This document shows positions 5,001 through 62,239 of a stretch of 64,000 nucleotides of DNA, in pieces. The notes under the pieces were generated by a model. The model was not told the origin of the DNA, ran no database searches, and was given only the letters and a program-made list of their open reading frames with translations. Every line of letters begins with the position of its first letter. Position 1 is the stretch's first letter. The DNA comes from Callorhinchus milii (taxonomy: Eukaryota), in assembly GCF_018977255.1 (NCBI RefSeq), contig NW_024704751.1:16306001-16370000 (forward strand). The letters run 5' to 3'. The position numbers were made by a program, and so were the translations under genes.

Positions 5001-5088
5001 AACACCCGTGCGATTGTCCCGCGCCTTTCCCGCGTCAGGAGGACATCCCGGGTCTCAAGAGTAAATCACCTTTAAAAGAAAAACGTAC

Positions 5089-6080
5089 CTGTCGTACTCC
5101 CGGTTGTCTCTCCCACACCGGGAGTCGGTGTGCTTCTCCCAGTCTTTCCCGTGTCTGCAGGTAGTGAGGGAGATGATGTCTTTGCCGTTGTGGAGGTGGT
5201 GGAGAGCGTTCCTGGTGTCGGAGCCGATGCCAGTCAGGTACCTCTTACCTTTGAAGGCCAGCAGGTACCTTCTCCTGGGAGGGACCGTGTTGGACAGCAG
5301 CCCACCCCGGGGGGGACCACCTCTCTGGGGATGTTCTCTGGAGAACAAGGGGATGGAGACATCAAAGCGCGGTCTGTAGCTCTCCGAGCAGAAGCTGGCC
5401 TTGGCCACCAGGGCTTGGCCCGGGTCAAAGCCCAGGTCCTCGGTGTAGTGGGGCCAAGTCCCGGAGTACAGGTTGAACAGGAGATGGTTCCTGCCCCGGT
5501 TCCACAGGGGAGACGCCAGGACTTTGCGGTCCACGTTGGGGACGAACTGCGGGGAGAGTTGGTCCCGGTCTAACGTGTCGATGTTGAGGACGAACAGACA
5601 GGCGCCCCCGGGGTCGGCGGTGTGGTACCGAGACGCCCGGAGGGAGGCGAGGATCTTGCGGTAGGTGTCCGACGTGCGCTCGCTCTGGGGCGGGTACACG
5701 TACACCCCGAAGCCCCGCTGCTCGCACCGCGACAGGTCGAAGCAGGTGTCCATACGGCAGGCGTGGCTCCCCGGGAGCCTGACCCGGTCCGCCCGCTCCC
5801 GGTGCCTCTCCCCGGGGCTGCCCCCCCCCTCCTCCTCCACCTCCACCACCTCCACCTCCTTCCCTCCATCCTCCACCTCCTCCTTCCCTCCATCCTCCAC
5901 CTCCTCCGCCGAGAAACCCGTCAGCGCCTCCGCCTCGTCCCACACCGGCCAGCGGCCCCCCCGCGGCTCCCCCGGCCCGCGGGCCAGCAGCGGGAGGCGG
6001 CCGAGGTGCGCGGCGGCCAGGTACAGGAGCAGGAGGCAGAGGCAGGAGGCGGGCAGCGGGGAGCGCCTCCTGGGCGGCAT
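5089..6080 (-). CDS. EXTL1: Exostosin family glycosyltransferase, coding exon 1 (EXTL1/ext1c by synteny); rest of the gene runs off the left of the window
   Basis: ATG at 6080, followed by a signal-anchor. EXT1-type motifs [35 protein letters not shown] and [18 protein letters not shown] are present. The exon ends at EYDR with donor AG|GTACGT at 5089/5088 (phase 2), the same boundary as EXT1 exon 1. It is divergent from PAFAH2, as EXTL1 is in human. Confidence 0.85.
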
Positions 6081-9543: not shown

Positions 9544-12500
9544 ATGGGGAACGGCCAGTTCATACAGCTCCCTGTCCCCAAAGGACCGCATTCCGTGGGC
9601 TGCACCGACATCATGGCCGGTCACACCAAGGAGGTGAGTGCATGATCGTTACAGGACTTGAGAGACAAATGAAAGCTTTTGTTCAGCACTTACATGGCTC
9701 CCTCCACGCAGGGTAGCGTCTCAGAGCGCTTATAACTTCTGAACATCTCCAGGGTGGTCCCAACTGGTGGCCCATGGGCCGCATCCGGCCCCGGGGTATT
9801 TACCTCCGGCCCCTGAACACAGGATGCAGAGAGACAGATACAGAGGCAGAGCGAGAGATGCACAAGAGACACACACAGACATAGAGAGAGAAGACACCAA
9901 GACAGATAGCTCATCACTGGCTGTATTATTGTCTTAACATTGATAATAATAATATAATAATAATAATCCTTGCATTTGATATAGCGCTTTTCACGTCGGG
10001 AGGACGTCCCAAAGCGCTTCACAGAACACACTGTGAAGTGAATTGACTGTATATTTGTGGGCGAACGCGGCAGCCAATTGCGCACAGCAATGTCCCACAA
10101 ACAGTCGTAGATTGAAAATGACCAATTTATTATTGTTTTTGGTTTTGGAGGGATTATTATTAGGCTCTGTGTGGAGTAAGGAAACTTGCCCAAGGTTTCG
10201 CCCTCTGCCTGGAATTGAACTCAGGTCTCTCACTTGCAAAGCGAGTGCTCTAACCACTGAGCTACAGGACTCCGTGATATGAATGTTTACATTGCATTGT
10301 AACTAAAATAATGGAAAATTAAGTAACACAATTTAAAACATAGGATTTCTATATGATTCTTCTGGGTTATGTTTCTGGAAGGGGAAAACAAATTTTTTGG
10401 TTATGCATTTCTCAAATTCGGCATCTGGCCCACAGTAGCCAAAAGGTTAGAACAACCTGATTCCTGCTTGAATTTGCCTCCTGAATCTGCCTCCATTGCC
10501 TCCCTTCCAGACACTCATGGCTCTCTTTGTAAAGTCATTCAGTCTGAGCTTCCTGCTCACCATTCTTCTTCTGTGGAAAATGCTGTCCTCTTGAAGTGAA
10601 AGTCACAATAGAGTTTATAAATATGAATTGTTGTTGTTCTGAGCTCAAGTCTATTTTCCCGTTTGCATACTTCATGACTTTGTTATAGAAGTCATTAGGT
10701 TTCAGTTTAGAATCTTGAAACACTTACTAATCAGATCTTTTGTGGCTTCCCCTCTGTGGTAGCTCGTGTTGCAAAACAGCAACTTGCATTTATATCGCCC
10801 ACAAAATACAGTCAATTCACAGTATATTCTATGACGCGCTCGTCACAGGTTAAGGCGCTATATCAAACGCAACGATTATTATAATATAGTGCCCTTCAGT
10901 GGGGTAGCGTCCCGAGAGTTTAAGGCCTCTCTTTAAGAAGTTTAAGGTCACTTAACGGTTTCACATGTCTGAGTATCATGTTTAAAGGCAATATACTGTG
11001 TTGTAAGAGGGAGGAAGCTGTTGGTGGATGATTGTGTATAACAACTTGATGCACCCAAAAGGAAGTATCAAGTTATTCAAACATTCTTTTGAGTTTGGCC
11101 AACCCCTTGGGCACTGTTAACATGCTGAACAAATGGAGAGGTAGAGCCGCGCTCTGCTGATGATATGTACCTTAGGCTCAGTCACACGTTGCAAAGGCTG
11201 AGTGAGCATACCGCAGGCCTGACAACCCATATTGTGCAAATGGTGATTAGGAAAGCAGAAGTGTGAATGTGGTTTTTGTAATCCCCGTTTCCACAGAAAC
11301 AAAACACTGAAGTAACGTGCCAGTTAACCCTTTGGTGACTTGTGCTGTGAGGTTCTGACTCTTTCAAGGCCACTATCAGAACCAAATTGGATAAGTCTGT
11401 AAAGAGAATCAAAAGCGCAAAGGTTTTGGGGAAAGAGCAGGGGAATGGGATTAGAGTGGAGAGCACCAGTGGGGAGGTGTGAGCATTAGAATTGGCCAAA
11501 TGACCCCCGTGCCACCTCCTGTTCTGTAAATTCAAGGGCTCTGAAAATTGTGCAAGTGTTTTCCTCACTTAGGGAAGTTTTTTCCGGTTGTACTATCCCT
11601 GTGACCCTGAAGAGGGGGAGAAGCCGCCGTGGATTCCCAGATACGAATACTACCAGGGCTTGGCCGAGTACCTGAAGCGCAGCAGGCGGTGGTTTGCCTC
11701 CCTCCTGAACATGGCTTTTGGTGAGACCCCCGCACTCTCTGCTCTGTGGTGTGGCAAGTGGCATTGGTTATAGGGCGCAGCTCCATTAGCGAGGTGTTCC
11801 AGGGATGCGTTTAGGGTTGCAGCCGGGTGTCTGATGCACAGAAACCCATCACCATGCTGAGATTATCCAAACCAAACTGAGAATTCCGTGCACATGGAAG
11901 GTCCGGAGATAGATTGTTGAAAGGAATGCGCTCTCTCTCCCTGGAGGGATGCATCCTGCTTACCTAATTCCGGACAGTATTAGGCTCAGGTTGGCAAGAA
12001 CCAAGACTTGGGGTAACTGCTGGAGTCTAACCAGCTAAGGCCTGACTTGAAATGATTCCAGGAGCAAATCACCTCCTCACTCCCTGATTGGAAACAACGA
12101 CTCCACCATGTCAGTGTCCGGGGTGGCGGCTGCAGGTACCCTTACCTCTCGCTAATGCGAGTGGCCAACAAGCATGCAAGGGGATTACCTGGTGGGTGTG
12201 CAAGACAAGCTGTAGAACAAGCTGTAGTGAACGGATCTGTTCTCTATGAGCCGAGGTGCAAGGTTTCATGTCTTTTTATGTTTTCGCTGCAGGTGACTGC
12301 AAGGTGCCGGCGACATGGAACGCTCGCTTCAAAGCAAATGAGACATATCCAGTGATTGTGTTTTCTCACGGATTGGGAGCTTTCAGGTGAGACACAAAAT
12401 ATTGAAGTTACCAGGAGAGGTGCAGACGTGCTCAGCACTGACCATCCTTCTGCAGAATGGGAAACAAGTGACGAATCTGTCTGATTTTCTCTCTTCCTTC

Positions 12501-15500
12501 ATGTGGGGGTTTGAAGGGAGAGGCAGTGCAGATGCCAATTGTAACCCCCCCATAACTGTCCTGAGACTTGCACAGGCCAATGAGGGAAGCTACTGTGTTA
12601 CAGGATGGAGAGTGGATGAGCTGAGAGCAATGAGGTCTTGTATTAGAGAAACCTGTGTGATATCAATATCCTCATTCGAATACAAATCGTTTTGTATATT
12701 GATCTATTGTCCTTGTGATTAATTAGGTGGCATGTCAGTGGGCAGAGCAAGAGAGAGAGTGAGGGAGTAAGTCAGGAGAGAAATCTACAATGACCTTCCG
12801 ATTAATCTAACATAAATTCTTATCACACCCTCCTATATCAGAACCAAATTATTAAGAATGATGATACTGATCTTCACCTGTGTCAGCCTGACTCAGTCAG
12901 TCGCACTCTCTCAAGACAGTCAGAAGCTGGGTGCCCCAAGCTTAGACTTCGAGCTCACAGTCCAGGCTGATGCTCCAGCGCAGTGCTGAGGAGTGGGGAG
13001 TGCTGCATTGTTGGATGTATTGTCCTTCATGTAGTGCATTAAACTGAGGTCCTGTGTGAGGTAGATGTTAAACAACAACAACAACTTCAACAACTTGCAT
13101 TTATTCGGGCGCCCCTCACGCAGGATAGCATCCCGGAGAGCTTGGTCCTGTAACACTTTTGGAAAAGAGAAGGGATTTTAATAATCCTACAGATTAATCA
13201 GCCTTGAGGCTGTGTGAAGATGTTGTATGCAAATCAAATACCACATTTACCTACAAATACACGGTCACTTGACAGCAATTCCCTGTGAGGAACTTTGACA
13301 CATTTTGAAGCTATGTAAAATACACGGATTATTGCTATGTCCATATTGCTATGTACAAACGGACTGATAGCTTTCTCTGTCATCACAGGGGCGTTTACTC
13401 TGCCATCTGCATCGCGGTGGCTTCTTATGGCTTCCTCGTTGCGGCCATCGAACACCGGTCAGTGAGTCAGATGCCTGTGAGCGTGTGTTCCCTCGTGTCT
13501 GAAAATGATCACTTTTATTGATTAATATCAGCTGAAAAAGTGCATACGGTCACTCCTAGGCAACTACTGCACGACAGCCATGTGCACGCATGTGGAGCTT
13601 AGCGATGGTTACCCCGGAGCTCCTGTCCTGATGCTGCTTGGGTGGGTGAGGGGGGGAAGTGATGTAAGGTGTGGTGAGCGTATGAATGCATTTTTCTTGT
13701 TTGTAAACTCTTTGTCTGTGATCACAGGGATGAGTCTGCATCGACCACTTATTATTTTGAGTCGCTCCCGAAACCCACGGAGCATGATCCGACCTCCAAG
13801 CCCCAAAAGACCTCCTCTACGTCCTCCTCTCCTCCTCCATCCCCCTCTCCCTCCTCCCCAGGGTCCTCACTCCAGGAGAAGTGGCTTCCCTACAGGAAGG
13901 TTGAGGGTGAGGAGTTTGAAATGCGGAATAGACAGGTCTGTCAGTCTCAACTCACTTTAATCCTGTTCCTAACCTGGAAGGGAGGGAATGGGAGGGAGGG
14001 GGGATGTGATCCAGGTGGGGGGGGGGGGATACAAGGGTAGGGATAGTGCCGGATTGACCCCCTACCACCCCAGGGCTCGGGATTGTCGGGTAAAATGAGG
14101 GGGTGCTGATTCATGGGGGTGGGGGGGGGCTGTGCATAAAAACATCTGGTATAGTGAAACTTTGTCTGCCTTAAGTGGAACTTCTGAACTGGGCTGCACA
14201 GGTTGTCAGCATTCAGAGCCAATCAAGGGGGCGTTGGGGAGATTTCCCATACACCAAATCTGTCCTGGGGTGGGGCGGGGGCAGTGGCAGGATTGCAGCA
14301 GTTGCACAACTAACTCAGGACCTCTGATGGCAGTGGTGCAGTACTGCATACCGTGCAGTTTGTGCCCAGAATGGGTGACCCTTTGTCGCCCTCCCTCACC
14401 GCTCAGCACTAGGTGACTGTGAGGTGGGTTCAGTGTCTCGCCCGCCCTCTCCTGGTGGTGGTGTTCTCTGGGAAAGTTTGACATGATAAGCTCTGTGTAA
14501 CTGTAATCACTTTATTTCTCCACCACCCCCCCCCTCACCACCCCTCAGGTTGGCCAGAGAGTGGATGAATGTGTTCATGCACTGCAGGTTCTTGAGGATC
14601 TGAACAATGGGCATAATGTGGACAATGTCCTGGAGGGAGGCTTTGATCTGTCCATGCTGAAGGTACCAAAAAAAAGACAATAAATTGGTCACTCAATCCA
14701 TGACTGTTTGTGGGACATTGTGTGCAATTGGCTGCCGGGTTTCACCCACAAAATATACAGTGAATTCATTTTACAGTATATTCTGTGAAGCGCTTTGAGA
14801 CATCTCGAAGACATGATAAGGCGCTATATCAAATGCAAGGATTATTATTATTTTTTATTACCAAACGGGAACGCTTCTCCTGAATGTACGTCCAGGGAAA
14901 CAGCAGGTTCCCCAGGCCAGCCAGCTTCGCTCTCAGCTCACTGATGGGAATAATGTAGGTGTGCTTTGAGCGGATGGTGGGGGCGGTGGGCTCTGAGGCT
15001 TTGAACGATGACAAGGAAGAGGGCTCCAGCCCAGTACAGTGAGACTGTGAATTTGATTGTCTAACTTGCAACACATGCTGCTCCTTCCTGCAGGGTTGTT
15101 TCTCACACCCACTCTTACTTCTCCTCAGGGCTGGATGGATCTGCACAGAGCTACCATCGTGGGCCACTCCTTCGGGGGAGCCACAGCCATCCAGGCCCTG
15201 GCCAAAGACACTAGGTTCAGGTTGGGACTTGACTCGGATTTTCCAGGCAACCAGGGGCAGCGGAACGTGGGATTCCGGGATCGATTTTAAACTAAAGGCG
15301 CTGGGAATCTCCAGGTCAAGCAGCGTGGCAGTTAAGCAATGGGACCATCGATGCCCCATTCCTGCCCCCACCTGAGCGCACATACACACTGAGCAGTGAT
15401 GACACAGCGGGGTGGGGAGGGGGACAATAGGAGTCCTTGTTAATGGTTGCTGATACAAGCTCATTATCCCCAGGGTTCTCTCACGCTGACCCTCCCCCCA

Positions 15501-29230: not shown

Positions 29231-32200
29231 ATGGCAAATGCTGGTAAGTATCCATGGGGCTAGACCAACAACAAATTACATTTGTATTGCTCTTTCCTAT
29301 GTGCAAGTCACAGTTTGCAAGGGACAAAAAATGGTTGTCCACAGCCAAAGGCGATCCCACCCCAAAAAACAAAACTTGCACAATAGTTTTTAAGCAAAAA
29401 AAATTATATTAAAGAAGCTCTGCATCCATCTTCTCCAGACTCCTCTTGCACTCGCAAACCCCCAGCTTTATACTTGTACATGTAGCTCGATCACCAATAA
29501 CCATAAAAGGCAGTGACTGGATTTATCCCCCTGTAACAGTGACTAAGTTACATTGCACCAGTAAGCTTGCTCAGGTATAGAGGGGTCCAACATGAGAGAA
29601 CCAGATAAATAACAAGACTAAAGACTATCATTCTGTTGGTATAGATCAGTTGCCCATTTACCTAACCAGTCACTACAATTCATGTTGCACTTCACATTGA
29701 CCCACTTGTTAATATTAATTATGTTTGGCTCAATCCATTTTAAATGCTGAACATCCTATTACCAATTTGCCAATCTTATTTAGAAATAGCAGGTGAACTG
29801 TTTCTTGGGCTGTTTTTCTTTCAGCCACCAGTTTATATTGATTCTCGTTAAATAAGTATTTGTATCCTGACTAAAGCTTTCTGAATGAACTGCACAAAGT
29901 CAGGTTTTCATAGTTGGGACAGCTGGAGACTATAATGCAATTCACTAAGGTTTTTTTCTCAGACGCCCAGGTGAAAGACATCCAGGTGAAAGAAATTGAT
30001 AAACGCTCTTCAGGACAGGCTTTTGAATTGATTCTGAATCCAACTGGAGGTGAAGCCATTCCAGAATTTCCCCTTTCTCCTCCCAAGAAGAAGGATCTCT
30101 CGCTAGAAGAAATCCAGAGAAAGCTGGAAGCAGCTGAGATCAGGCGAAAGGTGTATGCATTATTGTTTCTATGATCTTTTCTCTGAAGATGCTGACTTAA
30201 ACTGAGTATAGTTTCATTGGTTCTCTGAATCCCCCGGTACCTATCTCACTTCTAGATTTTCTAGTACCAAACACAATGCATGTATTAAACCAGTGTAGTA
30301 TCACAATTGAACCTAATTTCAGTTGTCATTGTATGGACTTACATGCACTTTCTAGTGTGTAAGATAGTTTGGAATTGTCTTTCTCCACAGCCAAGGGTGA
30401 TGCAAATACAGCACAAACTGGTATTGAAATCCTCAAGTTTGGACAATCCTCTGCATATTACAAAATGTTATCCTAAATGTAATTTTAATATGAGATTACT
30501 CTAAAGTTATGGTTTTTAACAAAATTACATTTATATAGCGCCTTTCATGTTGGGAGGACGTTCTAAGGTGTTGGACAGATGGAGTTACGGACTCGAGCTG
30601 AGCGTCGGGGTAGGGGGGTGAAGCAGGGGGGTCGAAAGCACGGTCGAAGAGGAGGTCTTGGAGGGGGGGGGAGGTGGAGGGACTGCGGGATGGAGTTCCA
30701 GAGGATGGATGCAGAGTGGCGGAAGGCCCATTCACTGATAGTGGGGTAAGCAGGATGGGAGACGTGAAACAGGCCAGAGCACGCTGAGCAGAGGGAGCAA
30801 ACAGGGTGATAGGGGGGTTAGGAGGTTGTAGAGGTAGGGGCAGAGCAAGATCATGGAGGGCTTTGAAGGTGAGGTCCAGGATCTTGAACTGTATACTCTG
30901 TGATGGGAAGCCAGTGGAGTTGGGCAAGGATGGGGTCACAGAGCCTAGTGCGGGAGAGAACATGGGCTGCAGAGTTCTGGATGATCTGCAGCCTGTGGAG
31001 GGAGGAGTTGGGGAGGCTAACTAGCAGTGAGTTTGTATAGTCGAGCCTCGTAATAGGCGTGTATGAGGGTTTGGGCGGCCTGCAGTGTGAGACGGTGTCG
31101 GAGCCGGGCGGAGGTGGGGGAAGGCAGAGCGGGTTATGACGTGAATGTGGGGTAGAAAGGATAGTTGAGGGTCGAACAAGACCCTCAACTAGTGATGCTG
31201 TCAGCGCCTGAGGTGAGGAGGCACTGACGGGGGCCAATCAGGAGAACCTTGATTTTATTGACGTTCAACTGAAGAACGTAAGCTCTCATCCAGGACTTAA
31301 TGTCTGATGTTTTAAAATAAAAATATACAACTTTCTAATTTGGCGCTGAAGATAGTGAAGCTGTTGTTAAGCGACAGTGCAGGTGGTAGGAGTAGCTTGG
31401 GTAAGCAACTGAGAATATTACAGCTTTGCTTTTCTCTCCTTTTGTTAAGTCTTTAAATGTTTTACGCTCCTATTTGTTTGTGTCACCAAAACAGTGGGAT
31501 GGGCCTTGTGGATGAATTGTTTGTTTGGCTAAACAAATGGTCTTTGTTGTACAGTCACATGAAGCAGAAGTGCTGAAGCAGCTGGCTGAAAAACGAGAGC
31601 ATGAAAAGGAGGTGCTTCAGAAAGCAATTGAAGAGAATAACAACTTTAGCAAGATGGCAGAAGAGAAACTGACTACCAAGATGGAAGCCAATAAAGAGAA
31701 TCGTGAAGCCCAGCTAGCTGCTAAACTGGAGCGCCTGCGAGAGAAGGCAAGTTCTGACTCAATGTCATGTATGGATTAATTGGTAAACAAATAGATTTTG
31801 ATGGGGTTGGGGGAGAGGTTCATCAAATTTGTGGAGTATTGTTATTGCATTAGTATAATCCATTCCAGGTGAGTTAATTGCTGCTTCCTCAGTTTCGTCC
31901 CCTTTTTTCCCCCCCCCACCTCCCAAACCACCCTGTTGCGTGGGTATCCAAAGTGCAATTAGAGCCCCTCATTGCTATTCTGGTGCAGCACAGACCATAG
32001 ATTCAACCTGAGAATGTCTTGGTCTGTAGGTTAAGCCATTGTTAAAATGGATCCCTTGGAGACGACAAAGATGATGATAATTTTAAGCCCAACAAATAAA
32101 CATGAAAGTGGTGTACTTTTTAGGATTGCAGTCAACCAAATCTGCTCAATGGGTGATGAGAGCAGTTATAAAATGTGAATTCTTGTACTGATTCTTTACA

Positions 32201-44424: not shown

Positions 44425-46740
44425 ACAATACAAAATACATTTTTAAAGCGTCTTTTATGTTGAGAGGACGTTCCAAAGCGCTGAACCATCAGGGATTAGA
44501 CCCGAATGGGGGCAGTTGGGATCAGGGAGGGTTGAGGGTGGGGTTAGGAGGGTGGCCGAGGCACAGTCGAAGAGGAGGAGCTTGAGGCATGCCTTGAAGG
44601 AGGCGAGGGAGCGAGTTGAAAGGAATGTGGGATGGAGTTCCAGAGGGTGGGGGCAGAGAGGCTGAAGGCCCAACCGCCGATGGTGGGGTGGGCTGGACAT
44701 AGAACAGACCAGAGCCTGCTGAGCAGAGGGAGCAGACAGGTGATAAGTGGAGTCCTGTAGCTGTAGCTCAGTGGTTAGAGCACTCGCTTTGCGAGCGAGA
44801 GACCTGAGTTCAATTCCAGGCAGCGCAAAACCTTGGGCAAGTTTCCTTACTCCACACAGTGCCTAATAATAATCCCTCCAAAACCAAAAACAATAATAAA
44901 TTGGTCATTTTCAATCTATGACTGTTTGTGGGACATTGCTGTGCGCAATTGGCTGCCGCGTTCGCCCACAAATATACAATCAATTCACTTTACAGTGTGT
45001 TCTGTGAAGCACTTTGGGATGTCCTCACGACGTGAAAAGCGCTATATCAAATGCAAGGATTATTATGATTATTATTATAATAAGTCGGAGAGGTAGGAGG
45101 GGGGCAAGGCCATAGAGGGCCTTGAAGGTGAGGACAAGGATTTTGAACTTGATCCTCTGAAGGATCAGTGGAGCTGGGTGAGGATGGAGCCTGATGCAGG
45201 AAAAGACATGAGCTGCAGAGTTCTGGATGATTTGCTGCTTGTGGAGGGAAGAGTTGGGAAGGCCGACAAGCAGGGTATGGCATAGTCAAGCCTGGTTGTA
45301 ATGAAGGCATATATGAGGGTTTTGGCAACCTGAGGGGTGAGGCAGTGGTGGAGTTGGGCAATGTTGGGGAGGTGATGGAAGGCAGAGTGGGTCATGGCCT
45401 GGATGTGGAGGAGAAAGGACAGTTGAGGGTTGAACAAGATGCCTAGATTCCTGGCTGGCTTGGTGAGATGGAGTGTGCATCTGTGGATACTGATGCTGCC
45501 AGTGTTTAAGGTGTGGAGGTGCTGGCACAAGCCAATCAGGAGAGCCTTGGTGACGTTCAACTGTAGAAAGTCGTCTCACATCCATAGGCAGGCAGTCTGT
45601 CAGAACATCAGTGGTCCTGGGATCGAGGGTGGAGGCAGAGAGATAGAGTTGGGTGTCATCCATGTACATGTGCAATTTGACCCCATGTCTGCGGATGATA
45701 TCCCCAAGAGGGAGCATGTACAGGTTGAAGAGGAGAAGACCGAGTTCAGGGCCCTGAGGAACACCACACGAAACACCATGGTGCGGGGGCTGAAGGAGAA
45801 GCTATTTGTGGAGACAAAGTGGAGATGGTGTGAGAGATGGGATCTGAACCATTCAAGGACAGAACCTGTGGGCAGCATGGAAACCCAATTGGACGGGTTC
45901 ATAAAGGGAGTGACAGGAGAGGAAGGAGTGAAGCAGGAAGGCAACAACTCTTGGAAAGGAAAAAGGGAGATTGAAAATGGGCAGTAGTTAGTGAACAGGG
46001 ATGGGTCCAGGGAAGGTTTTTGTTAGGATAGGGGTAATGACAGCTGTTTTTAGGGCAATGGGAATGGTGCCAGTTGACAGGGAGAGGTTGATGAGGACTA
46101 AGAGTAAAGGGATAAGGAGGTGGAGCTGGTAGGTAAGGAAGGGGGTAGGGATAGGGTCGAGGGAGCAGGTGGTTGGCTTCATGTGGGTTATAGTGATGGT
46201 GAGAGAGAGGAGACAAGTTCGAAGGTGTGGAGGGAGGGATGGATGGGTAGGAGCCAGAGTGTAAGCGAGAGATGGGGAGGGGTTGGTGGTTGGGGGTGAT
46301 CTGCTCATGGAGCTTGGTGTGCGAGAGGAAGTGAGCTGCAGAATTCTGAATAAACTGCAGTTTGTGGAGGGATGAGTTGGGAAGTCAGGCAAGCAGGGAG
46401 TTAGCATAGTCGAGCCTGGACATAGTGAAAGCATGGATGAGGGTCTCGGCAGTCTGAGGGGCGAGGTAGTGGCAGAGGTGGGGAAAGGCAGAATGGATCA
46501 TGGCACGAAAAGACATTTGAGGGTCAAACAAGATACCCAAATTCCATATTAATTGGTGAGGTGGAGAATACATCCCTGAAAAGTGATGCTGTCAGCACCT
46601 GAGGTGAGGAGGCACTGACAGGAGCTAAGCTGGTGGGTCTCTGTCTTGTCGAGTGGTTCTGGAGTTCAGGGTGGAGGCGAAGTTAACCCTATGCCTGTGG
46701 ATGATATCACTGAGCAGAAGCATGTAACTATTGAAGAACG
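44425..46740 (-). mobile_element. Long decayed L2 LINE(s) with RT-domain remnants, interrupted by a SINE
   Basis: Translations MKPTTCSLDPIPT...[47 protein letters not shown] (YADD-like motif) and [14 protein letters not shown]...[10 protein letters not shown] second 3' segment lies at 46290-46700. Confidence 0.85.
44749..45080 (+). mobile_element. Full-length tRNA-derived SINE inserted in an L2
   Basis: A box TAGCTCAGTGG, B box GAGTTCAATTCC and (ATT)n tail, flanked by ATAAGT at 44743-44748 and 45080-45085. Confidence 0.85.
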
Positions 46741-51177: not shown

Positions 51178-52236
51178 ATGGCCACGGTGGTGATGGAGCA
51201 GATCAGCCGTCTCTTCATTAACATCCAGCAGATCAGGCAGCTGCCGAGCCTCCTGGAACAGAGCGCCCCCTGCCTGCCGGCCACGGTGCGGGACCATGAG
51301 GTGCCGCGCATATTCCGGGAGCCTTACATCCACTCGGGATACCGGCCGGTGCATCACAGCTGGCGCTATTACTTCCTGACTCTGTTCCAGCGGCACAACG
51401 AGGCGGTCAATGTGTGGTCGCACCTGATCGCTGCCCTGGTGGTCCTGATCAAACTGCAGGAGTTCTCGAAAACGGTGGATTTCCTCTCAGATCGCCACGC
51501 GTGGCCCTTCCTGATCCTGATCCTGGCCTCCTTCAACTACCTGAGCTGCAGTGCCTTAGCTCACCTGCTACAAGCCCGCTCCGAGCTCGCACACTATTCT
51601 TTCTTCTTCCTGGATTACGTTGGAGTCGCGATCTATCAGTACAGCAGCGCTCTGGTCCATTATTACTACAGCATCCAGGAGGAATGGTACCATCTCGTCA
51701 GCTCTTTCTTCCTCCCAGTGGCCACGCTCCTGGCCTGGCTGTCTTGCATTGGCTGCTGCTACGCCAAGTCCAACGCTCAGGTGTTACAGCCGTGGGCTCG
51801 TAAGCTATACCAGGTGGTGCCCGCTGGCCTGGCCTACCTGCTGGACATCAGCCCTGTGCTGCACCGCATCTACAGCTGCCACTCGATCAGCTGCACCGAC
51901 CCAGCCGTGCCTTACCACCGTTGCCAGGTCCTCTGCTTCCTGGTCTGCGCTCATTTCTTCTCCTGCCCGCACCCGGAAAAATGGCTGCCGGGAAAGTGTG
52001 ACATCTTCCTGCAGGGACATCAGATCTTTCATCTGTTCATGGTTTTCTGCACGCTGGCCCAACTGGAGGCCGTGCATCTGGACTACAAGCGGCGAAGACA
52101 CCTGTACCAGGCATGGCACCAGCACTCCACTTCTGCTGTGTTCATCGGCTGCACCTTCATCATCCTCTCCAGCATCTCCACGGCCATTTACATGCGGTAC
52201 AGAGTCAAACGCAAACTCAGCCACAAGGAGAAGTGA
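51178..52236 (+). CDS. PAQR7: Membrane progestin receptor alpha (PAQR family), 352 aa, single coding exon
   Basis: Starts MATVVMEQISRLFIN in Kozak context GCCATGG, with an acceptor CCCTAG ending at 51159. PAQR motifs EPYIHSGYRP, HNEAVNVWSH, SALAHL, FFFLDYVG, PEKWLPGKCD and GHQIFH are present, with about 7 hydrophobic segments. Adjacent to STMN1 as in human. Confidence 0.93.
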   Translation: MATVVMEQISRLFINIQQIRQLPSLLEQSAPCLPATVRDHEVPRIFREPYIHSGYRPVHHSWRYYFLTLFQRHNEAVNVWSHLIAALVVLIKLQEFSKTVDFLSDRHAWPFLILILASFNYLSCSALAHLLQARSELAHYSFFFLDYVGVAIYQYSSALVHYYYSIQEEWYHLVSSFFLPVATLLAWLSCIGCCYAKSNAQVLQPWARKLYQVVPAGLAYLLDISPVLHRIYSCHSISCTDPAVPYHRCQVLCFLVCAHFFSCPHPEKWLPGKCDIFLQGHQIFHLFMVFCTLAQLEAVHLDYKRRRHLYQAWHQHSTSAVFIGCTFIILSSISTAIYMRYRVKRKLSHKEK

Positions 52237-56960: not shown

Positions 56961-57384
56961 ACAATCCCCGCACTCCTTCACTTCAATGAGCCATAAATGT
57001 ACAATTGAGCAACACTAAAATGTTTAGCTGATGAAATTTGTTCTCTTCACAAAGAATCTGAAGCTTGCCAAATAATTTGACCCTTGAAGCCCTGGGGATC
57101 AATTATCAAGATCTGGCTGTTCAGCCACACCAGGTAGCCTACAGTGACAGGAACACAAGAAAAGCGTCTGGAAGATAATCTGGTCACAGACTGGGCAGGT
57201 AAGGAAGCTTTTAAAGTTTTAAAACTTTGTGCAACCACAAATGTCACTGAATGCTCGTCAGGTCTGTGAGGAAGGTAGCTCAGAGCTGAAAGAAGGAAGT
57301 GGAGATCCATTGCTGACAAACGAACTTCTCCTGTCATTGTTTACTTAAGGTGCAGTTGCTGGCAACTGCCACACTTCCTCAAAG

Positions 57385-57456
57385 CTATTCCTATAAACCT
57401 GGCTCATTCTTCACGAGCTCTTCAGTGTGGGTTGAGGTTGCAGACAGACTCCAGAG
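57385..57456 (+). promoter_or_regulatory. TATA promoter and putative non-coding exon 1 of the adaptor gene
   Basis: CTATAAA near 57391 and ETS-like AGGAAGT/ACTTCCT at ~57294 and ~57373. Strong donor GAG|GTGAGT after 57456. Confidence 0.5.
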
Positions 57457-58590
57457 GTGAGTACACAGCTATTAAACAGCGCTAACAACCGGGAGCCGGG
57501 TTAGTGGGGTCGCTGTACGTGACTCTGATCATTGACCCCTTGCTCGGAAATTTGTCTAATTATGAGTGTGATCCCATTTCTGTGGAAGAAAGTACTCTCA
57601 GCTTTAGCTGTGAATCACAACAGGAGGCAGTGGGCACGCATTTTCAACCACTCAGTCAGAGACGTGAAGGACCTTTACTCTTTCATTATCACAGGTTACA
57701 TTTGTCTGCGTGTGATTTGTGCTGTTTGATCTGTGATTTCTGTGGGGTTCCCTTCCGCCACACCTGTTCTGAAGGAATTTCCTGTCAGGAGGAATCGGTA
57801 ACAAAGTACAAAATTATTTGCTCACTGAATTTCAGTAAATTACAGAGTTACTGGGTGCTCACTCTTTTCTACTCTCATCCCACTTCCCTTGCTCTCTCCA
57901 TCCGACATTGTGAGTGATTTTTCTCACCCTTCATAATTGGACTGTGATTACACTCTGACCTCCCGAACAGGGTGTGACCCCTCCTGTGCACAGTGAGTGA
58001 CGTGTTGTCAGAGGTGAGTCCAGGCTTCTCATATTACCTTTATAAATCAGATATTACAGTGAGAGATTCCCCAAAGTACAGCACCAAGAGCTGAACTAAA
58101 TCCGCTTTGCAAACATCTCACAGTCCAGGCTGACGCTGCAGTTAAAGGCTCGAGGAGAGCTGTGTTGTCAGAGGAACCATTAGGTGGATGTTAAAGAGCC
58201 TACAACGTTCTTGGTAAAGACGAAGTTTTAACCATCATTATGGCGAACAATTCTCCAGATAAATTGGTCACTTGCTTATGGTTGTGTGTTCCTGGGTGCA
58301 GTTTGGCTGCTGCATTTGCTCACTTGTAAACAGTCACTACACTAACAGCAATACCTGTGAAGAGCTTCGAGAGATTTACCATAAAAATGCAAGATTTGCT
58401 CACAAAATAAACAGTCAATTCACTTTACAGTATATTCTGTGAAGCGCTTTAGATGTTGCGAAGATGTGATAAGGTGCTATGTCAAATGCAAGGATTATTA
58501 TTATTATTAACATAATCTTTATTCATCAGACTAATTCTGTATTCTGTTTTCCAGGTTTCCACCTGCTTTGTCACTCCCAATCCTGGCTTC

Positions 58591-60804
58591 ATGGCTCCGG
58601 TTGAGAGTGGTGTGGGGAATGTTCCTGATCTGTCACAACTTCCTCAGCTCTGGCTAGCAATCTCCATCTTGTTGCTTCTCATCCTGCTCACAGTTGGCTG
58701 CAATTTCTGCAAGAGGTAAATCCCAGGATCTCTGTGCAATGCCGTGATGACTAGTCCTGGTCTGGAGGTTTAGCTGCCAATAATTTGCTAATAACACAGA
58801 TCACATTTGGAAAATTAGATCCATAATTGGAATATTTCCCACCTCTTTCAGATTGTTTCGGAACTGGTTTCACAGTAACGTTGCCTCTGCTAAGCTCCAG
58901 TGCTGTAACTAACATATTGACTTAATATTGTCGTCAATTGGTTCACTTTGTTACAACAACTTGCGTTTACACAGGGTGCATCTCGGAGTGCTTAACAGTG
59001 GCAGAACCTGATGCTGAGCTGGGAGGGAGGGAAGAGGTGATTTATTGTAAGCACGGTCGAAGAGCAAAGACTTCAGGCATGATCTGAAAAAGGGGAAGGA
59101 GCGGACAGGTAGAGGGATTGAGGGACAGTTCAAAGCTTCGGGCGGTGAAAGCATAGCCGCAGATTGTGGAGGGGACAAGGGACAAGCAGGAGGCCGAAGC
59201 CAGCCAAGCGGAGGCAGCAGATGGAGTGGGGAGTAAGCATATCAGAGAGGTAGAAAGGTGCCAGGGCTTGAAAGGATTTGTAGGTGAGTGTGAGGATCTT
59301 GAAGTCGATCCATTTGATGATGGAGAGCCAGTGCAGCCACTACCACAGGTGACCGGGCGAAGGTGGGAGGTAATAACGTTTGTGGGGATGAAGTGAAGTC
59401 AATTGGTTCAGTAGAACTCAAACCAGGTGAGTTCGGTCCCACTGAGGTGGATGAGGGAGGAGAAGCGGAGGAGAATGGCGTGATCGAGTTTGACAAAAGC
59501 AATGACGAGGTCCAGGAGACAGAGGGAGCCCTGGTCTCAGAGAGGATGTAATTTGTGACTTTGAAGAGTGCTGTCTCTGTGCTCATCAGATTTACTGGAA
59601 GACAAGGAAGAGGAGCGAAGAGACCTGTGCTTGTGTCTGTGGTGAGTGACGCACTGATGGCTGAATTAAGTCATTCAGTCCTTTGATTTTTTTGGTCCAG
59701 CACCATAATAATCTAATAATCCCTCCAAAAAAACAAAACAATAATAAATTGTCATTTTCAATCTACGACTGTTTGTGGGACATTGCTGTGCGCAATTGGC
59801 TGTCGCGTTCGCCCACAAATATACAGTCAATTCACTTTACAGTGTGTTCTGTGAAGCGCTTTGGGACGTCCTCCCGACGTGAAAAGCGCTATATCAAATG
59901 CAAGGATTATTATTATTATTATTATTATTATGCTTAAGAGTCTCCAAACCAAATTGCTGTGAGTTCCACAGTAGTTTAAGTTTGTCTTAGTGTGCACTCT
60001 GTCCATGGAGGGACCCTTCCCTACCTCATCCCAGAGAGTTTGGCATTGGAAAAAGCCAAGCCCTGGGGACCCCAGAGTGAGTATTGGTGTAAGTAACTAC
60101 TGGAATCCAACTAGCTAAACACTGGCAAGCTTGTCGCAAGTTTAACCCAGTGTCCTAATACCTCTCACTTACTGGTTAACAAATATTCAGAAACAGATAA
60201 CGATTTTAGCTGAGTTTGTTGCAGGTGGGATGCTTACCCTGTAACTGGTCCATTAATCCCGTGACACGGTAACTGATTATTAGAAGTCAAAACGCAAAGA
60301 AACTGACAAATTCTTCATTCTCTTTAGAGGCAGAGGTTTCCCACTCAGCTCACAGATGCAAGTCCCAATGGAGAGTTTCCACATTTACCGGGTAATGCGC
60401 ACGGGGCAGGGCGCACGGGGCAGGGCGCACGGGGCAGGGTGCACGGGGTAATATTGTAATGTTCCTTGTTTTCCGCTCACATAGGGGACAAGGCGCTGGA
60501 AGTTGACGATGACCTGTATGAAGTCATCAGCGAAGTTAACATGAACGAGTCGGAGCCGCAGAAGTTGCAGCCGTGTCCCAGCCCGGGCAAGGCCAGCTCG
60601 GCACAAACCTGGGCAGTTGCGAGTGGGGAGGGAAGCGGCAGCAGAGAATCGGTGAAACCGGCCGAGCCCGGGGCAAACATGGCAATTTATGCAAAAGTGG
60701 TGAAGCAGAAAGAGAAAGGGGATCAGATAGAACCTCAGGACGCAGCTCAGTGGGAGGAGGAGGAAGCGGAGCCTCCGCCGGTGCCTGAGAAGCATTTAGA
60801 ATAG
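58591..60804 (+). CDS. Palmitoylated type III transmembrane adaptor, PAG1/LIME1-like (186 aa, 4 coding exons)
   Basis: Exons 58591-58715, 59590-59641, 60328-60391 and 60485-60804. Introns are GT-AG with phases 2, 0 and 1, joining into a 561-nt open frame: MAPVESGVGNVPDLSQLPQLWLAISILLLLILLTVGCNFCKRFTGRQGRGAKRPVLVSVRQRFPTQLTDASPNGEFPHLPGDKALEVDDDLYEVISEV...MAIYAKVVKQKEK...EEEEAEPPPVPEKHLE. AATAAA at 62077. Confidence 0.8.
58955..59585 (-). mobile_element. L2 LINE fragment in an intron of the adaptor gene
   Basis: Minus-strand translation STETALFKVTN (HSTETAL motif of the RT domain) and ALHHQMDRLQD, with an ACAACAAC tail near 58953. Confidence 0.7.
59705..59930 (+). mobile_element. 5'-truncated SINE of the same family
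   Basis: Body nearly identical to the 9945-10273 copy, with a long (ATT)n tail. Confidence 0.85.
60397..60448 (+). repeat. 14-bp tandem repeat GCGCACGGGGCAGG (~3.7 copies) in a 93-nt intron
   Basis: Directly visible in the sequence. Confidence 0.85.
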
Positions 60805-62239
60805 GGCAATATAGAGTTGTGAAGGAAGTGAAGCACTCGGTGTAGTCACCCACAAAATCATGCAATCAAAACCCAGCATGGCTCAGCTGCTTGCACTTTT
60901 ACCTCTGGTTCAGACGATTGTCTCACTTTGAGTTCACAGTCTCGTTTGGCTCTTCAGTGCGCTATCTGGGGGAGTGCCGCATTGTTGGATGAGATGTTAA
61001 ACCAACCTTTATGGTCGCTCCCCCCACATCCCCACCCACCCTCGAAAAAATGTCTTGATTCAATATTTCTTGAATTTTGGCATCAATCAAGAAATATTCA
61101 TTTAAGAAAAAAAACTGACACGCACAAACAATTGAACACCGACTTACCTTATACTCATAGGGATGCTTCCTGTTGGCTTCATGGGCCATTTCTGGCCTGT
61201 GGGTCACAGGTTGGTCACCCCTGTGTTAAGCCGAGATCCTGTCTGCCTGTTCAGGTGGATGTCAAATGATCCCATGACACTGTTTGAAAAGAATAGTTTC
61301 GACCAGTGTCCTGGCCAACAATCCTCCAGATAAAATTGAACGTTCCCTTTTTGTATGTAGATATGTGAGTGTGTGTATGTTTGTGGGATATTACTCTGTG
61401 CAAAGTGACAGCTGCATGTGCCAACAAATACAGTCACTACATTTGACAGCAATTCTTCTTGAAGTGCTTATGCAACATTTTGATATTTATATGAAATACA
61501 AGGATTATTATTGTGCATCAAGCAGCACAGAGTCCCCAAATAGAGTCGCTGTGTCCCGACTAGTGAGGGTCACTCTACCCTGCGTGAGAGGCGCTATATA
61601 AATGCAAGTTGTTGTTGTTGGCTGGGAGCTGACCCAGAGCTGCCATGACACAGGGACCAGGGTTTTGCTGATCGAAATCAAGGCCTTGGGAAGATAATGG
61701 ACTTCACCTGATTCAGAAGATTTGCGTCCGGAAATAAATCTAAAAGCATCAAAATTAACTTGTAAGTAACTGCAATTACCTGAGTAATCCTCTCCATTCA
61801 GAACAAGACGTCAATGAGAGGGACCCACCACCTTGTGGCCATTTAATTCTAACCCTCTGAATGATGCCTGTTAAGTATAGTATCGTAGGCCAGAAATTAT
61901 TGTTGCTAATAGTTATCAAATGTCACAAATTATACCCTATTCCAGTGTGTTTGATTGCTGGTTTTGTGCTGTGTGTGGATGATTATTTGTAATGTCACCA
62001 TCTGACACCATCTGTTTTTGTGCCGCTGTGCGTGCTGCAGGAAAAAGCCGCACCTTACAAAAATTGTATTTTTTTAAATAAAAAACACTATTTTAAATAT
62101 AGAGAAAGTATATTCTATCTCCCAAGCTCATTCTGCTTGGAATTGAATACAATATTTCTATGACAACCCCTTTAAAATCGCCTGTGTAAATCCATCATCT
62201 GTGTAAATCAATCGCCTGTGTGGATCAATTGACTGTGCG

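What the first reader, a model, noticed from the sequence alone, without database searches (positions are those of the whole stretch)
57385..62085. Hidden spliced gene for a raft-type transmembrane adaptor, a candidate third PAG1/LIME1 ohnolog
Seen: four exons with canonical, phase-compatible splice sites join into a 186-aa protein. It has a ~20-aa extracellular leader with no signal peptide, one TM helix, and a juxtamembrane CxxC (CNFC) followed by basic residues. It has exactly two cytoplasmic Tyr motifs (DDLYEVI and IYAKV) and a C-terminal acidic PPPVPEK. Known: this architecture defines palmitoylated TRAPs (PAG1, LIME1, LAT, NTAL). Y[AS]xV motifs recruit Csk in PAG1 and LIME1, and acidic YExI motifs suit Src-family SH2 domains. 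PAG1 lies near STMN2 (8q21) and LIME1 near STMN3 (20q13), and I recall no such gene beside STMN1 in human. Inference: this is the STMN1-linked whole-genome-duplication paralog, kept in this lineage and lost in mammals, and it may act as a minimal Src/Csk switch in immune cells. The TATA plus ETS promoter would fit that role. It may already exist as an uncharacterised fish gene model.
Basis: partly seen in the sequence, partly recalled or inferred. Interest (0 to 1): 0.85.

Follow-up and report, generated by a model that had tools for sequence, protein, structure and literature searches.

The report
Small PAG-like membrane adaptor gene beside STMN1
This is a real, spliced gene for a small membrane-anchored signalling adaptor related to PAG1, probably one that brings Src-type kinases together with their inhibitor Csk; sharks and rays have it as an unnamed gene.

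Summary
The four coding pieces translate as described and add up to 561 nt, or 186 codons plus a stop. Contigs from three RNA-like runs of two studies leave and rejoin the genome at the predicted splice sites (arithmetic).

A profile of 16 elasmobranch "uncharacterized protein" entries finds only exon 1 (E 1.4e-8) and exon 4 (E 8.8e-16) among 3323 six-frame pieces of the window. So this is a diverged ortholog of an unnamed cartilaginous-fish family.

All 16 relatives and the window keep LYEx[VIL], IYA[KR][VIL] and PP[VI]PxK[HY][LF]. CxxC is kept in 12 of 16 relatives and in the window.

The tail matches the middle of Pfam PAG, positions 167-275 of 428, in 11 of 11 relatives scanned and in the window. 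Most scores fall below Pfam's cut-off. Pfam LIME1 is never hit.

Its neighbours are exostosin, PAF-AH, stathmin and PAQR genes.

Most likely it is a palmitoylated docking adaptor for Src-family kinases and Csk. It is a new member of a known kind, of moderate interest.

The parts
57292..57456 (+). Possible promoter and non-coding first exon. It holds a TATAAA at 57392-57397, AGGAAGTG-type ETS cores at 57294-57302 (+) and 57372-57379 (-), and a GT donor after 57456.
   Evidence: The motifs are read only and are not tested. X3 record 19 carries 26 unlaid letters upstream of 58553. That fits 28 letters of an upstream exon ending in 'ag'. Another donor after 58013 fits equally well, so the identity of the first exon is open.
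58555..58715 (+). Coding exon 1. The CDS starts at the ATG at 58591. It encodes the short N-terminal outside part, the membrane span (about 58639-58698), CNFC (58699-58710) and Lys. It ends in phase 2.
   Evidence: Translation. The profile of 16 relatives matches it from Met to the donor, E 1.4e-8. Contigs leave the genome at 58553/4 and 58713.
59590..59641 (+). Coding exon 2, 52 nt. It encodes a basic juxtamembrane stretch.
   Evidence: Translation. X2 record 10 has 30 letters beyond 58713 (2+28). X3 record 19 is 241 = 28+161+52. The unspliced unitig ends at 59617, which is exon position 28 as predicted. It is not detectable by homology.
60328..60391 (+). Coding exon 3, 64 nt. It holds an NGxFPx[IL] motif that is shared by eye with the ray ortholog P0003.
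   Evidence: Translation. X1 record 5 is 620 = 1+64+555. The unspliced unitig ends at 60356, which is exon position 29. The resemblance to P0003 is read by eye. The profile does not detect it.
60485..60804 (+). Coding exon 4 with the stop codon. It holds DDLYEVI (60508-60528), IYAKV (60685-60699) and PPPVPEK (60772-60792).
   Evidence: Translation. Profile hit E 8.8e-16. Pfam PAG E 5.6e-4. Contigs start at 60484 in X1 and X2.
60805..62082 (+). 3' untranslated region. It contains one copy of the abundant interspersed repeat at about 61470-61620. The only AATAAA is at 62077-62082.
   Evidence: Contigs cover the region up to 62051-62053 in X1 and X3. The true 3' end was not seen.

Best explanation
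This is a real, transcribed and spliced gene for a 186-residue single-pass (type III) membrane adaptor. It is the diverged counterpart of an unnamed protein family of 215-264 residues found across sharks and rays.

The protein has no fold to speak of. It is a membrane anchor followed by three short docking motifs that have been held constant.

Inferred mechanism:
1. The CxxC next to the membrane is palmitoylated and places the protein in ordered membrane domains, as in PAG and LIME.
2. PP[VI]PxK is a class II SH3 ligand. Together with phosphorylated LYEx[VIL], a Src-type SH2 site, it docks a Src-family kinase by two domains.
3. That kinase phosphorylates IYA[KR][VIL], which then binds the SH2 domain of Csk.
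4. Csk is brought next to the docked kinase and shuts it off.

In effect it is the middle portion of PAG1 on a membrane anchor. Its place beside STMN1 fits an origin as a sister of PAG1 and LIME1, but that is not shown.

Shown here: gene structure, splicing, motif conservation, PAG-type similarity and the neighbouring genes. Inferred: palmitoylation, binding partners, direction of regulation and cell type.
For: Structure and translation.

Splicing: X3 record 19 is 241 letters = 28+161+52. X1 record 5 is 620 = 1+64+555. X2 record 10 is 161 = 133+28. Unspliced unitigs stop at 59617, 60356 and 60513. Those are exon positions 28, 29 and 29, which k=31 predicts from the 2, 1 and 1 letters shared at each junction.

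Homology: exon 4 finds P0003. Sixteen relatives were found. The profile hits only exons 1 and 4 among 3323 pieces.

Motifs: LYEx[VIL], IYA[KR][VIL] and PP[VI]PxK[HY][LF] are each present in 16 of 16 relatives and in the window. This holds although the window's tail sits on a branch of 2.13 changes per column, against a median of 0.13.

PAG similarity: Pfam PAG is hit by 11 of 11 relatives scanned, always at profile positions 167-275, with a best E of 6.9e-7, and by window exon 4. The Atlas neighbours of P0010 are adaptor families (PAG, LIME1, SCIMP, GAPT, LAX, SIT). For exon 4 alone the three listed neighbours are mixed PAG/LIME1 clusters.

Literature, passages read:
- PAG has a 16-aa outside part, a membrane span, a palmitoylated CSSC, basic residues, and proline-rich stretches at 131-138 and 257-263 (PMC2213442).
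- Y163/Y181 of PAG1 bind the FYN SH2 domain (PMC7550700).
- The Csk SH2 consensus and the LIME Y167 site (PMC2194115).
- The Cbp model of Src and Csk on one molecule (PMC3492796).
Against: - The predicted junctions were not among the 15 of 314 joints printed, and the unlaid letters were not shown. Splicing therefore rests on lengths and ends.
- The runs are only guessed to be RNA, and unspliced contigs are present too.
- Exons 2 and 3 are not detectable by homology. The window's model lacks roughly 38 profile positions of the middle part.
- The Pfam PAG score of the window piece is 19.6 bits, below the cut-off of 27. Only 2 of 11 relatives reach the cut-off.
- The second cysteine of CxxC is missing in 4 of 16 relatives.
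- PAG's own Csk site (Y317) and its C-terminal half have no counterpart here.
- No binding, lipidation or expression data exist.
Confidence: 0.7

Rival explanations
1. It is a later, cartilaginous-fish-only copy of PAG1, or of a PAG/LIME-like gene. In this reading the copy kept only the middle docking region and merely happens to lie beside STMN1. It is not a product of the early vertebrate genome duplications.
For: All 16 relatives found are elasmobranchs or unnamed. No bony-vertebrate protein passed any sequence search. Pfam sees PAG only, never LIME1.
Against: The searches were blunt. The word index capped scoring at 8000 candidates, and candidates were limited by length. The top Atlas cluster for P0010 is a 54-member chordate cluster named after the zebrafish gene si:ch73-204p21.2, with score 0.95 and 200 of 256 features. 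That hints at a bony-fish relative. The position next to a stathmin gene parallels PAG1 with STMN2 (both named within 8q21 in a passage of PMC8606210). It also parallels LIME1 with STMN3 (both treated as 20q13.33 genes in passages of PMC7839675).
Confidence: 0.22
2. It is an adaptor with no common ancestry with PAG. In this reading short docking motifs and a membrane anchor with CxxC arose independently, and the Pfam match reflects motif and composition similarity only.
For: The proteins are disordered: the Atlas's own model of P0010 has pLDDT 0.45. The Pfam scores are low, 15.9-29.1 bits. The membrane-anchor part does not match the PAG profile.
Against: All 12 matches (11 relatives and the window) fall on the same profile stretch and in the same order. 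That stretch holds the published Y181 site and the 257-263 proline-rich stretch, if profile numbering is close to human numbering, which is my inference. Exon 4 without the anchor still has only PAG/LIME1 clusters as its listed neighbours.
Confidence: 0.06
3. It is not a working gene in this genome. It would be a decaying copy, or a chance run of open frames among repeats.
For: The introns are full of highly repeated elements. The window's protein is shorter than its relatives, and it was not returned by any protein search.
Against: The frame is open through all four pieces, with canonical and phase-compatible splice sites. All three docking motifs and the CxxC are intact. The contigs fit the spliced form in three runs.
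Confidence: 0.02

Closest known systems
Elasmobranch 'uncharacterized protein' entries. Examples are LOC119966687 of Scyliorhinus canicula (P0013), LOC127581819 of Pristis pectinata (P0005) and the Narcine bancroftii entry (P0003).
   Same: The layout is the same and in the same order. The start is MAP.., followed by a [FL]PQL..-type membrane span, CxxC and basic residues, LYEx[VIL], IYA[KR][VIL], and then PP[VI]PxK[HY][LF] near the end. These are the orthologs.
   Different: The window's tail is only about 36-40% identical to the nearest of them and sits on a very long branch. It lacks about 38 middle positions. It also lacks the third tyrosine (Y[MT]T[PQ]) seen in 10 of 16 relatives, and the acidic end after HL[DE].
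PAG1 / Cbp (Pfam PF15347)
   Same: Both are type III proteins with a short outside part, CxxC directly after the membrane span, and basic residues (PMC2213442). The tail matches profile positions 167-275, in the same order. By published numbering that region holds the Fyn SH2 site Y181 and the second proline-rich stretch at 257-263.
   Different: It is less than half the length of PAG1. It has no counterpart of the N-terminal cytoplasmic third, of the Y317 Csk site, or of the C-terminal half. Here the Csk-type motif sits between the Src-type site and the proline stretch. Pfam scores are mostly under the cut-off.
LIME1 (Pfam PF15332)
   Same: The anchor type is the same. The IYAK/RVVKQ.. motif is close to the mapped Csk site of LIME at Y167 (Table I of PMC2194115). 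Like LIME, it has one Src-type site plus Csk-type sites.
   Different: The LIME1 profile is not hit by any of the 11 relatives scanned or by the window pieces. LIME is strongly basic (pI 9.7), whereas this tail is acidic by eye.
Zebrafish si:ch73-204p21.2 cluster (ESM Atlas)
   Same: It is the nearest Atlas cluster to P0010: score 0.95, 200 of 256 features, 244 aa, 54 chordate members.
   Different: This is a lead only. No sequence, alignment or map position was available. The one paper that names the gene lists it in expression tables of hindbrain neurons (PMC11578587, passages).

Membership tests
Raft-type palmitoylated transmembrane adaptors (search criteria of Brdickova et al. 2003, PMC2194115) | An N-terminal peptide of 5-50 residues without a signal peptide, followed by one membrane helix | tested here: met
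   About 16-19 residues precede a hydrophobic stretch of about 17-21 residues. This part aligns with the starts of the relatives. No signal-peptide or membrane-helix predictor was run, so this is read by eye.
Raft-type palmitoylated transmembrane adaptors (search criteria of Brdickova et al. 2003, PMC2194115) | CxxC starting 0-4 residues after the helix | tested here: met
   CNFC lies directly after the hydrophobic stretch and is followed by K and R. CxxC is present in 12 of 16 relatives, and the first Cys is present in all 16 aligned rows.
Raft-type palmitoylated transmembrane adaptors (search criteria of Brdickova et al. 2003, PMC2194115) | At least one Yxx[I/L/V] in the cytoplasmic part | tested here: met
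   There are two, YEVI and YAKV, and they are the only tyrosines in exons 2-4.
Raft-type palmitoylated transmembrane adaptors (search criteria of Brdickova et al. 2003, PMC2194115) | Actual palmitoylation and raft residence | not testable with these tools
   This needs a labelling or acyl-exchange assay and membrane fractionation.
PAG (Pfam PF15347) | Score at or above Pfam's gathering cut-off of 27 bits | tested here: not met
   Window exon 4 scores 19.6 bits, E 5.6e-4. The relatives score 15.9-29.1 bits, and only P0007 (27.2) and P0011 (29.1) of the 11 scanned reach the cut-off. The joined window protein was not scanned, by rule.
PAG (Pfam PF15347) | A match over the whole family profile, including the Y317 Csk site and the C-terminal half | tested here: not met
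   Every match is confined to positions 167-275 of 428.
PAG (Pfam PF15347) | Falls inside the PAG1 clade in a tree with PAG1 and LIME1 | not tested
LIME1 (Pfam PF15332) | A match to the family profile | tested here: not met
   No LIME1 hit appeared for the 3 window pieces at E up to 10 or for 10 relatives at E up to 10. P0003 was scanned only at E up to 1. HMMER's filters drop most hits with E above about 0.1.
Third whole-genome-duplication sister of PAG1 and LIME1 | Lies in the STMN1 block, paralogous to the STMN2/PAG1 and STMN3/LIME1 blocks | tested here: met
   The window's gene order is exostosin (-), PAF-AH II (+), stathmin (+), PAQR (+), then this gene. A cattle block lists EXTL1, PAFAH2, STMN1, PAQR7 and MTFR1L together (PMC12075139, passage). 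STMN2 and PAG1 are named within 8q21, and STMN3 and LIME1 as 20q13.33 genes (passages). The identification as STMN1/PAQR7 rather than other paralogs rests on this gene order, which I recall for human.
Third whole-genome-duplication sister of PAG1 and LIME1 | Orthologs in bony vertebrates at the same place, and a tree with three separate clades | not tested
The only hint is the Atlas cluster si:ch73-204p21.2.

The most novel reading that the evidence does not exclude
The family would be an ancient third sister of PAG1 and LIME1 from the early vertebrate genome duplications. It would have been kept beside STMN1 in cartilaginous fishes, perhaps also in bony fishes as si:ch73-204p21.2, and lost in mammals.

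It would be the smallest natural Src/Csk switch: one SH3 ligand, one Src-type SH2 site and one Csk-type SH2 site on a palmitoylated anchor. That would show which parts of PAG are the ancestral core.
Probability: 0.4. Interest if true: 0.6.

Novelty: new member of a known kind. Interest (0 to 1): 0.45.

Why it matters
Adaptors such as PAG1 and LIME1 set the threshold of Src-family kinase signalling in lymphocytes and other cells. They are long and carry many partly redundant motifs, which has made their mechanism hard to dissect.

This family keeps only three docking motifs while the sequence between them has diverged strongly (the window's tail sits on a branch of 2.13 changes per column). It therefore offers a natural minimal version to test.

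It also adds one more member to the set of immune signalling adaptors of cartilaginous fishes. If the duplication origin holds, it gives a dated example of adaptor loss in the mammalian line.

The practical gain for annotation is modest.

Tried and rejected
Sequence searches.
- A phmmer search with exon 4 against 1.84 billion representatives gave 4 hits at E up to 0.001. I kept P0003. I dropped P0001, P0002 and P0004 as repeat or low-complexity matches, judging from the table alone. They are 723-2418 aa long, and each matches in 6-12 separate short stretches.
- I tried three times to reach PAG1, LIME1 or bony-fish relatives: with P0003, with a 5-sequence profile and with the tail of P0007 alone (24 candidates). 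All three returned only the same family.
- Because of that, no tree with PAG1 and LIME1 could be built and no profile-profile comparison could be run.

Other attempts.
- The profile search for exons 2 and 3, and for a possible missing middle exon between 58650 and 60520, found nothing. All hits there had E above 0.1 apart from exon 1 itself.
- The tree of the tail could not place the window within or outside sharks or rays, because its branch is too long. I therefore draw no conclusion about the organism.
- Literature: no paper holds PAG1, LIME1 and 'paralog' together. None holds 'transmembrane adaptor', PAG1, LIME1 and 'evolution' together. So I found no printed claim of a third sister, within that library only.
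- Earlier scan notes hold nothing on PAG1, LIME1, Csk or stathmin paralogs.
- I made no structure prediction, because the Atlas's own model of P0010 is disordered (pLDDT 0.45).
- The TATA and ETS-like sites were only read, not tested.
- One record is unexplained. X1 record 2 joins 29 unlaid letters to 58554 and then runs unspliced to 58865. That does not fit the 28-letter expectation and may mark another first exon.
- My script printed the three predicted unitig end coordinates one too low, a slip in the print formula. The exon positions it printed (28, 29, 29) are right and give 59617, 60356 and 60513.
- I did not ask for any supplementary files. Gene tables in supplements might give the map position or expression of si:ch73-204p21.2.

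Full report
**What is in the sequence.**
Translated apart they give:
- exon 1: 41 codons from the ATG at 58591;
- exon 2: 17 codons;
- exon 3: 21 codons;
- exon 4: 105 codons and a stop.

Two further codons are split across introns (AG|A and G|GG, read). All four introns checked start GT and end AG. The coding lengths 125+52+64+320 = 561 nt give 186 codons plus the stop. Everything below rests on the pieces.

Exon 1 reads as a short N-terminal part without a signal-peptide-like start, then a hydrophobic span, then CNFC and Lys. Exon 2 is rich in Arg and Lys. Exon 4 holds DDLYEVI and IYAKV, and ends ...EPPPVPEKHLE. Those two tyrosines are the only ones in exons 2-4.

**Is it transcribed and spliced?**
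Eleven of the 13 listed runs of one organism hold the stretch or part of it. All of them are only guessed to be RNA or are of unknown kind. I laid X1-X4, from two studies, on 57385-62085. These are contigs, not reads. The tool printed only 15 of 314 joints, all of them between copies of a very abundant repeat, so the predicted junctions were not shown directly.

The listed records nevertheless fit the spliced model to the letter, assuming unitigs of k=31 (recalled) and using the junction letters computed:
- X3 record 19 is 241 letters long. It is laid on 58553-58713, with 26 letters before and 54 after. That equals 28 letters of an upstream exon, plus 161 (exon 1), plus 52 (exon 2). It stops exactly at the exon 2 donor.
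- X1 record 5 is 620 letters long. It is laid on 60484-61039, with 64 letters beyond. That equals 1 shared letter, plus 64 (exon 3), plus 555.
- X2 record 10 carries 30 letters beyond 58713, which equals 2 letters of exon 1 plus 28 of exon 2.
- Three unspliced unitigs end at 59617, 60356 and 60513. These are exon positions 28, 29 and 29. A branching graph should cut them exactly there, given that 2, 1 and 1 letters are shared between the end of the upstream exon and the end of the intron.
- X2 record 13 begins at 60484, the predicted start of the shared path.

I take this as good but indirect support for all three coding junctions in three runs. X4 added nothing at the junctions. Joined forms would also show that these runs hold RNA.

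Some points stay open. Unspliced pieces are present as well. The first, non-coding exon is not settled, because a donor after 57456 and another after 58013 fit equally well. Contigs reach 62051-62053, and the only AATAAA is at 62077. Tissue is unknown.

**Relatives.**
Exon 4 searched against 1.84 billion representatives gave one convincing relative, P0003, a 215-aa "uncharacterized protein" of Narcine bancroftii. It matched at E 2.2e-4, 40% identity, over query residues 4-105. Three other hits were long proteins matched in 6-12 short stretches, and I dropped them.

P0003 and then a 5-sequence profile found 16 proteins in all. Fifteen are named, from 14 shark and ray species, and one is unnamed. 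They are 215-324 aa long, and every one is called uncharacterized or hypothetical.

No bony-vertebrate protein and no PAG1 or LIME1 came back. The window's own protein was not returned either, although it shares several five-residue words with P0007. It is therefore probably absent from the protein sets searched. That is an inference.

A profile of the 16, run over all 3323 six-frame pieces of the window, hit only two. One was the exon 4 piece (E 8.8e-16, profile 123-227). The other was the exon 1 piece (E 1.4e-8, profile 1-44, from the Met to the donor). The next piece had E 0.33.

Exons 2 and 3 cannot be found by homology. By eye, exon 3 shares an NGxFPx[IL] motif with P0003. The window's model lacks about 38 middle positions of the profile. 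One Chiloscyllium isoform (P0019) lacks 12 residues at the place of that motif, so the middle is variable in the family too.

**What is conserved.**
Counts:

| Feature | Relatives (of 16) | Window |
|---|---|---|
| LYEx[VIL] | 16 | yes |
| IYA[KR][VIL] | 16 | yes |
| PP[VI]PxK[HY][LF] | 16 | yes |
| CxxC | 12 | yes |
| Third tyrosine, Y[MT]T[PQ] | 10 | no |

The first cysteine of CxxC is present in all 16 aligned rows. The other tyrosines are scattered.

In the tree of the tail, the window sits on a branch of 2.13 changes per column, against a median of 0.13. Its best identity is 36%. So the three motifs are islands held constant while the rest of the tail has changed almost completely. That is the pattern expected of docking motifs in a disordered tail. 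The Atlas's own model of P0010 has pLDDT 0.45.

**What it resembles.**
Pfam's PAG model (PF15347) is the top hit of window exon 4: E 5.6e-4, 19.6 bits, against a cut-off of 27. It is also the top hit of 11 of 11 relatives scanned, with 15.9-29.1 bits. Two of these reach the cut-off. Five relatives were not scanned by me, though the precomputed column lists PF15347 for one of them, P0012.

Every match lies on profile positions 167-275 of 428. The membrane anchor and the rest of PAG are not matched. The LIME1 model is never hit.

The Atlas features tell the same story, as leads only. For P0010 the neighbours are an unnamed chordate cluster named after zebrafish si:ch73-204p21.2 (score 0.95), then PAG-, SCIMP-, LIME1-, GAPT-, LAX- and SIT-type clusters. 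For exon 4 alone, without the anchor, the three listed neighbours are mixed PAG/LIME1 clusters at 0.87, 0.86 and 0.80.

**Comparison with the literature (passages read, not whole papers).**
- PAG has 16 outside residues, a membrane span, a palmitoylated CSSC, a basic stretch, and proline-rich stretches at 131-138 and 257-263. It binds Csk through Y317 (PMC2213442).
- Y163/Y181 of PAG1 bind the FYN SH2 domain (PMC7550700).
- If profile numbering is close to human numbering, which is my assumption, the matched stretch runs from the Y181 site to the second proline-rich stretch.
- LIME was found by searching for three features: a 5-50 residue N-terminus followed by a helix, CxxC within 0-4 residues of the helix, and a Yxx[I/L/V] motif. 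The window's protein meets all three (PMC2194115).
- Table I of that paper gives the Csk SH2 consensus Y[T/A/S][K/R/Q/N][M/I/V/R] and the LIME Y167 site. Both are matched by IYAKVVKQK...
- The Cbp model is that one phosphorylated adaptor binds a Src-family kinase and Csk at once, so that Csk shuts the kinase off (PMC3492796).

**Likely mechanism.**
Putting this together, and adding from my own knowledge that PxxPx[KR] is a class II SH3 ligand and that YE-x-[IV] suits Src-type SH2 domains, the likely mechanism is as follows. The anchor is palmitoylated. A Src-family kinase docks on it by two domains, through PP[VI]PxK and phosphorylated LYEx[VIL]. Csk is then recruited through phosphorylated IYAKV. 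All of these steps are inferred.

**Neighbourhood.**
The window holds, in order:
- an exostosin first exon (5055-6080, - strand);
- a PAF-AH II exon (about 15057-15290, + strand);
- stathmin exons (29914-30171 and 31525-31776, + strand);
- a 352-aa single-exon PAQR gene (51178-52236, + strand).

The adaptor gene lies about 5 kb further on. I confirmed only that stathmin exons are there.

A cattle block lists EXTL1, PAFAH2, STMN1, PAQR7 and MTFR1L together, with no adaptor named among them (PMC12075139, passage). STMN2 and PAG1 are both named within 8q21 (PMC8606210). STMN3 and LIME1 are both treated as 20q13.33 genes (PMC7839675).

The deciding tests could not be run.

**Verdict.**
The gene is real, and it belongs to an unnamed, cartilaginous-fish-wide family of small PAG-like adaptors. 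Functionally it looks like the middle of PAG1 on a PAG/LIME-type anchor.

By Pfam's own criteria it is at best a borderline, partial member of the PAG family, and it is not a LIME1. I file it as a new member of a known kind. Interest is moderate. It would rise if the family proves to be an ancient third sister with bony-fish members. I found no paper that describes it, within the library searched.

Noticed in passing
window 58330-58510, 59740-59900, 61470-61620; similar ORF text also at 9690-10193, 44833-45096 and 59683-59937: An interspersed repeat that ends in an (ATT)n run occurs three times within this gene, twice in introns and once in the 3' UTR. Its contig depth in the RNA-like runs is enormous, up to about 1e6 against 5-50 for the gene. 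It caused all 15 printed joints. It is probably a highly expressed or highly copied SINE-like element.
   Followed up: no
window about 60397-60449 (intron 3): The 93-nt intron 3 consists largely of a 15-nt unit repeated about three and a half times (read). X2 record 12 covers part of it unspliced.
   Followed up: no
window 51178-52236 (+): There is an intact single-exon 352-aa PAQR (HlyIII) gene, E 2.1e-53. It is taken to be PAQR7 from its neighbours.
   Followed up: partly
window 5055-6080 (-) and 15057-15290 (+): There is an exostosin GT47 first exon, preceded by a very GC- and Gly/Pro-rich part, and a PAF-acetylhydrolase II exon with the GHSFGG serine motif. Together with the stathmin and PAQR genes they give the EXTL1-PAFAH2-STMN1-PAQR7 order.
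   Followed up: partly
P0012 against P0019 (Chiloscyllium punctatum), and P0007 and P0018: P0019 lacks 12 residues around the NG motif. That suggests a small cassette exon. P0012, P0007, P0011 and P0018 carry extra N-terminal residues before the conserved MAP/MAS start, which are probably mis-called starts in those gene models.
   Followed up: no
window 58554-58865, X1 record 2: One contig joins 29 unknown letters to the exon 1 acceptor and then runs on into intron 1. This may be an alternative first exon combined with intron retention.
   Followed up: no
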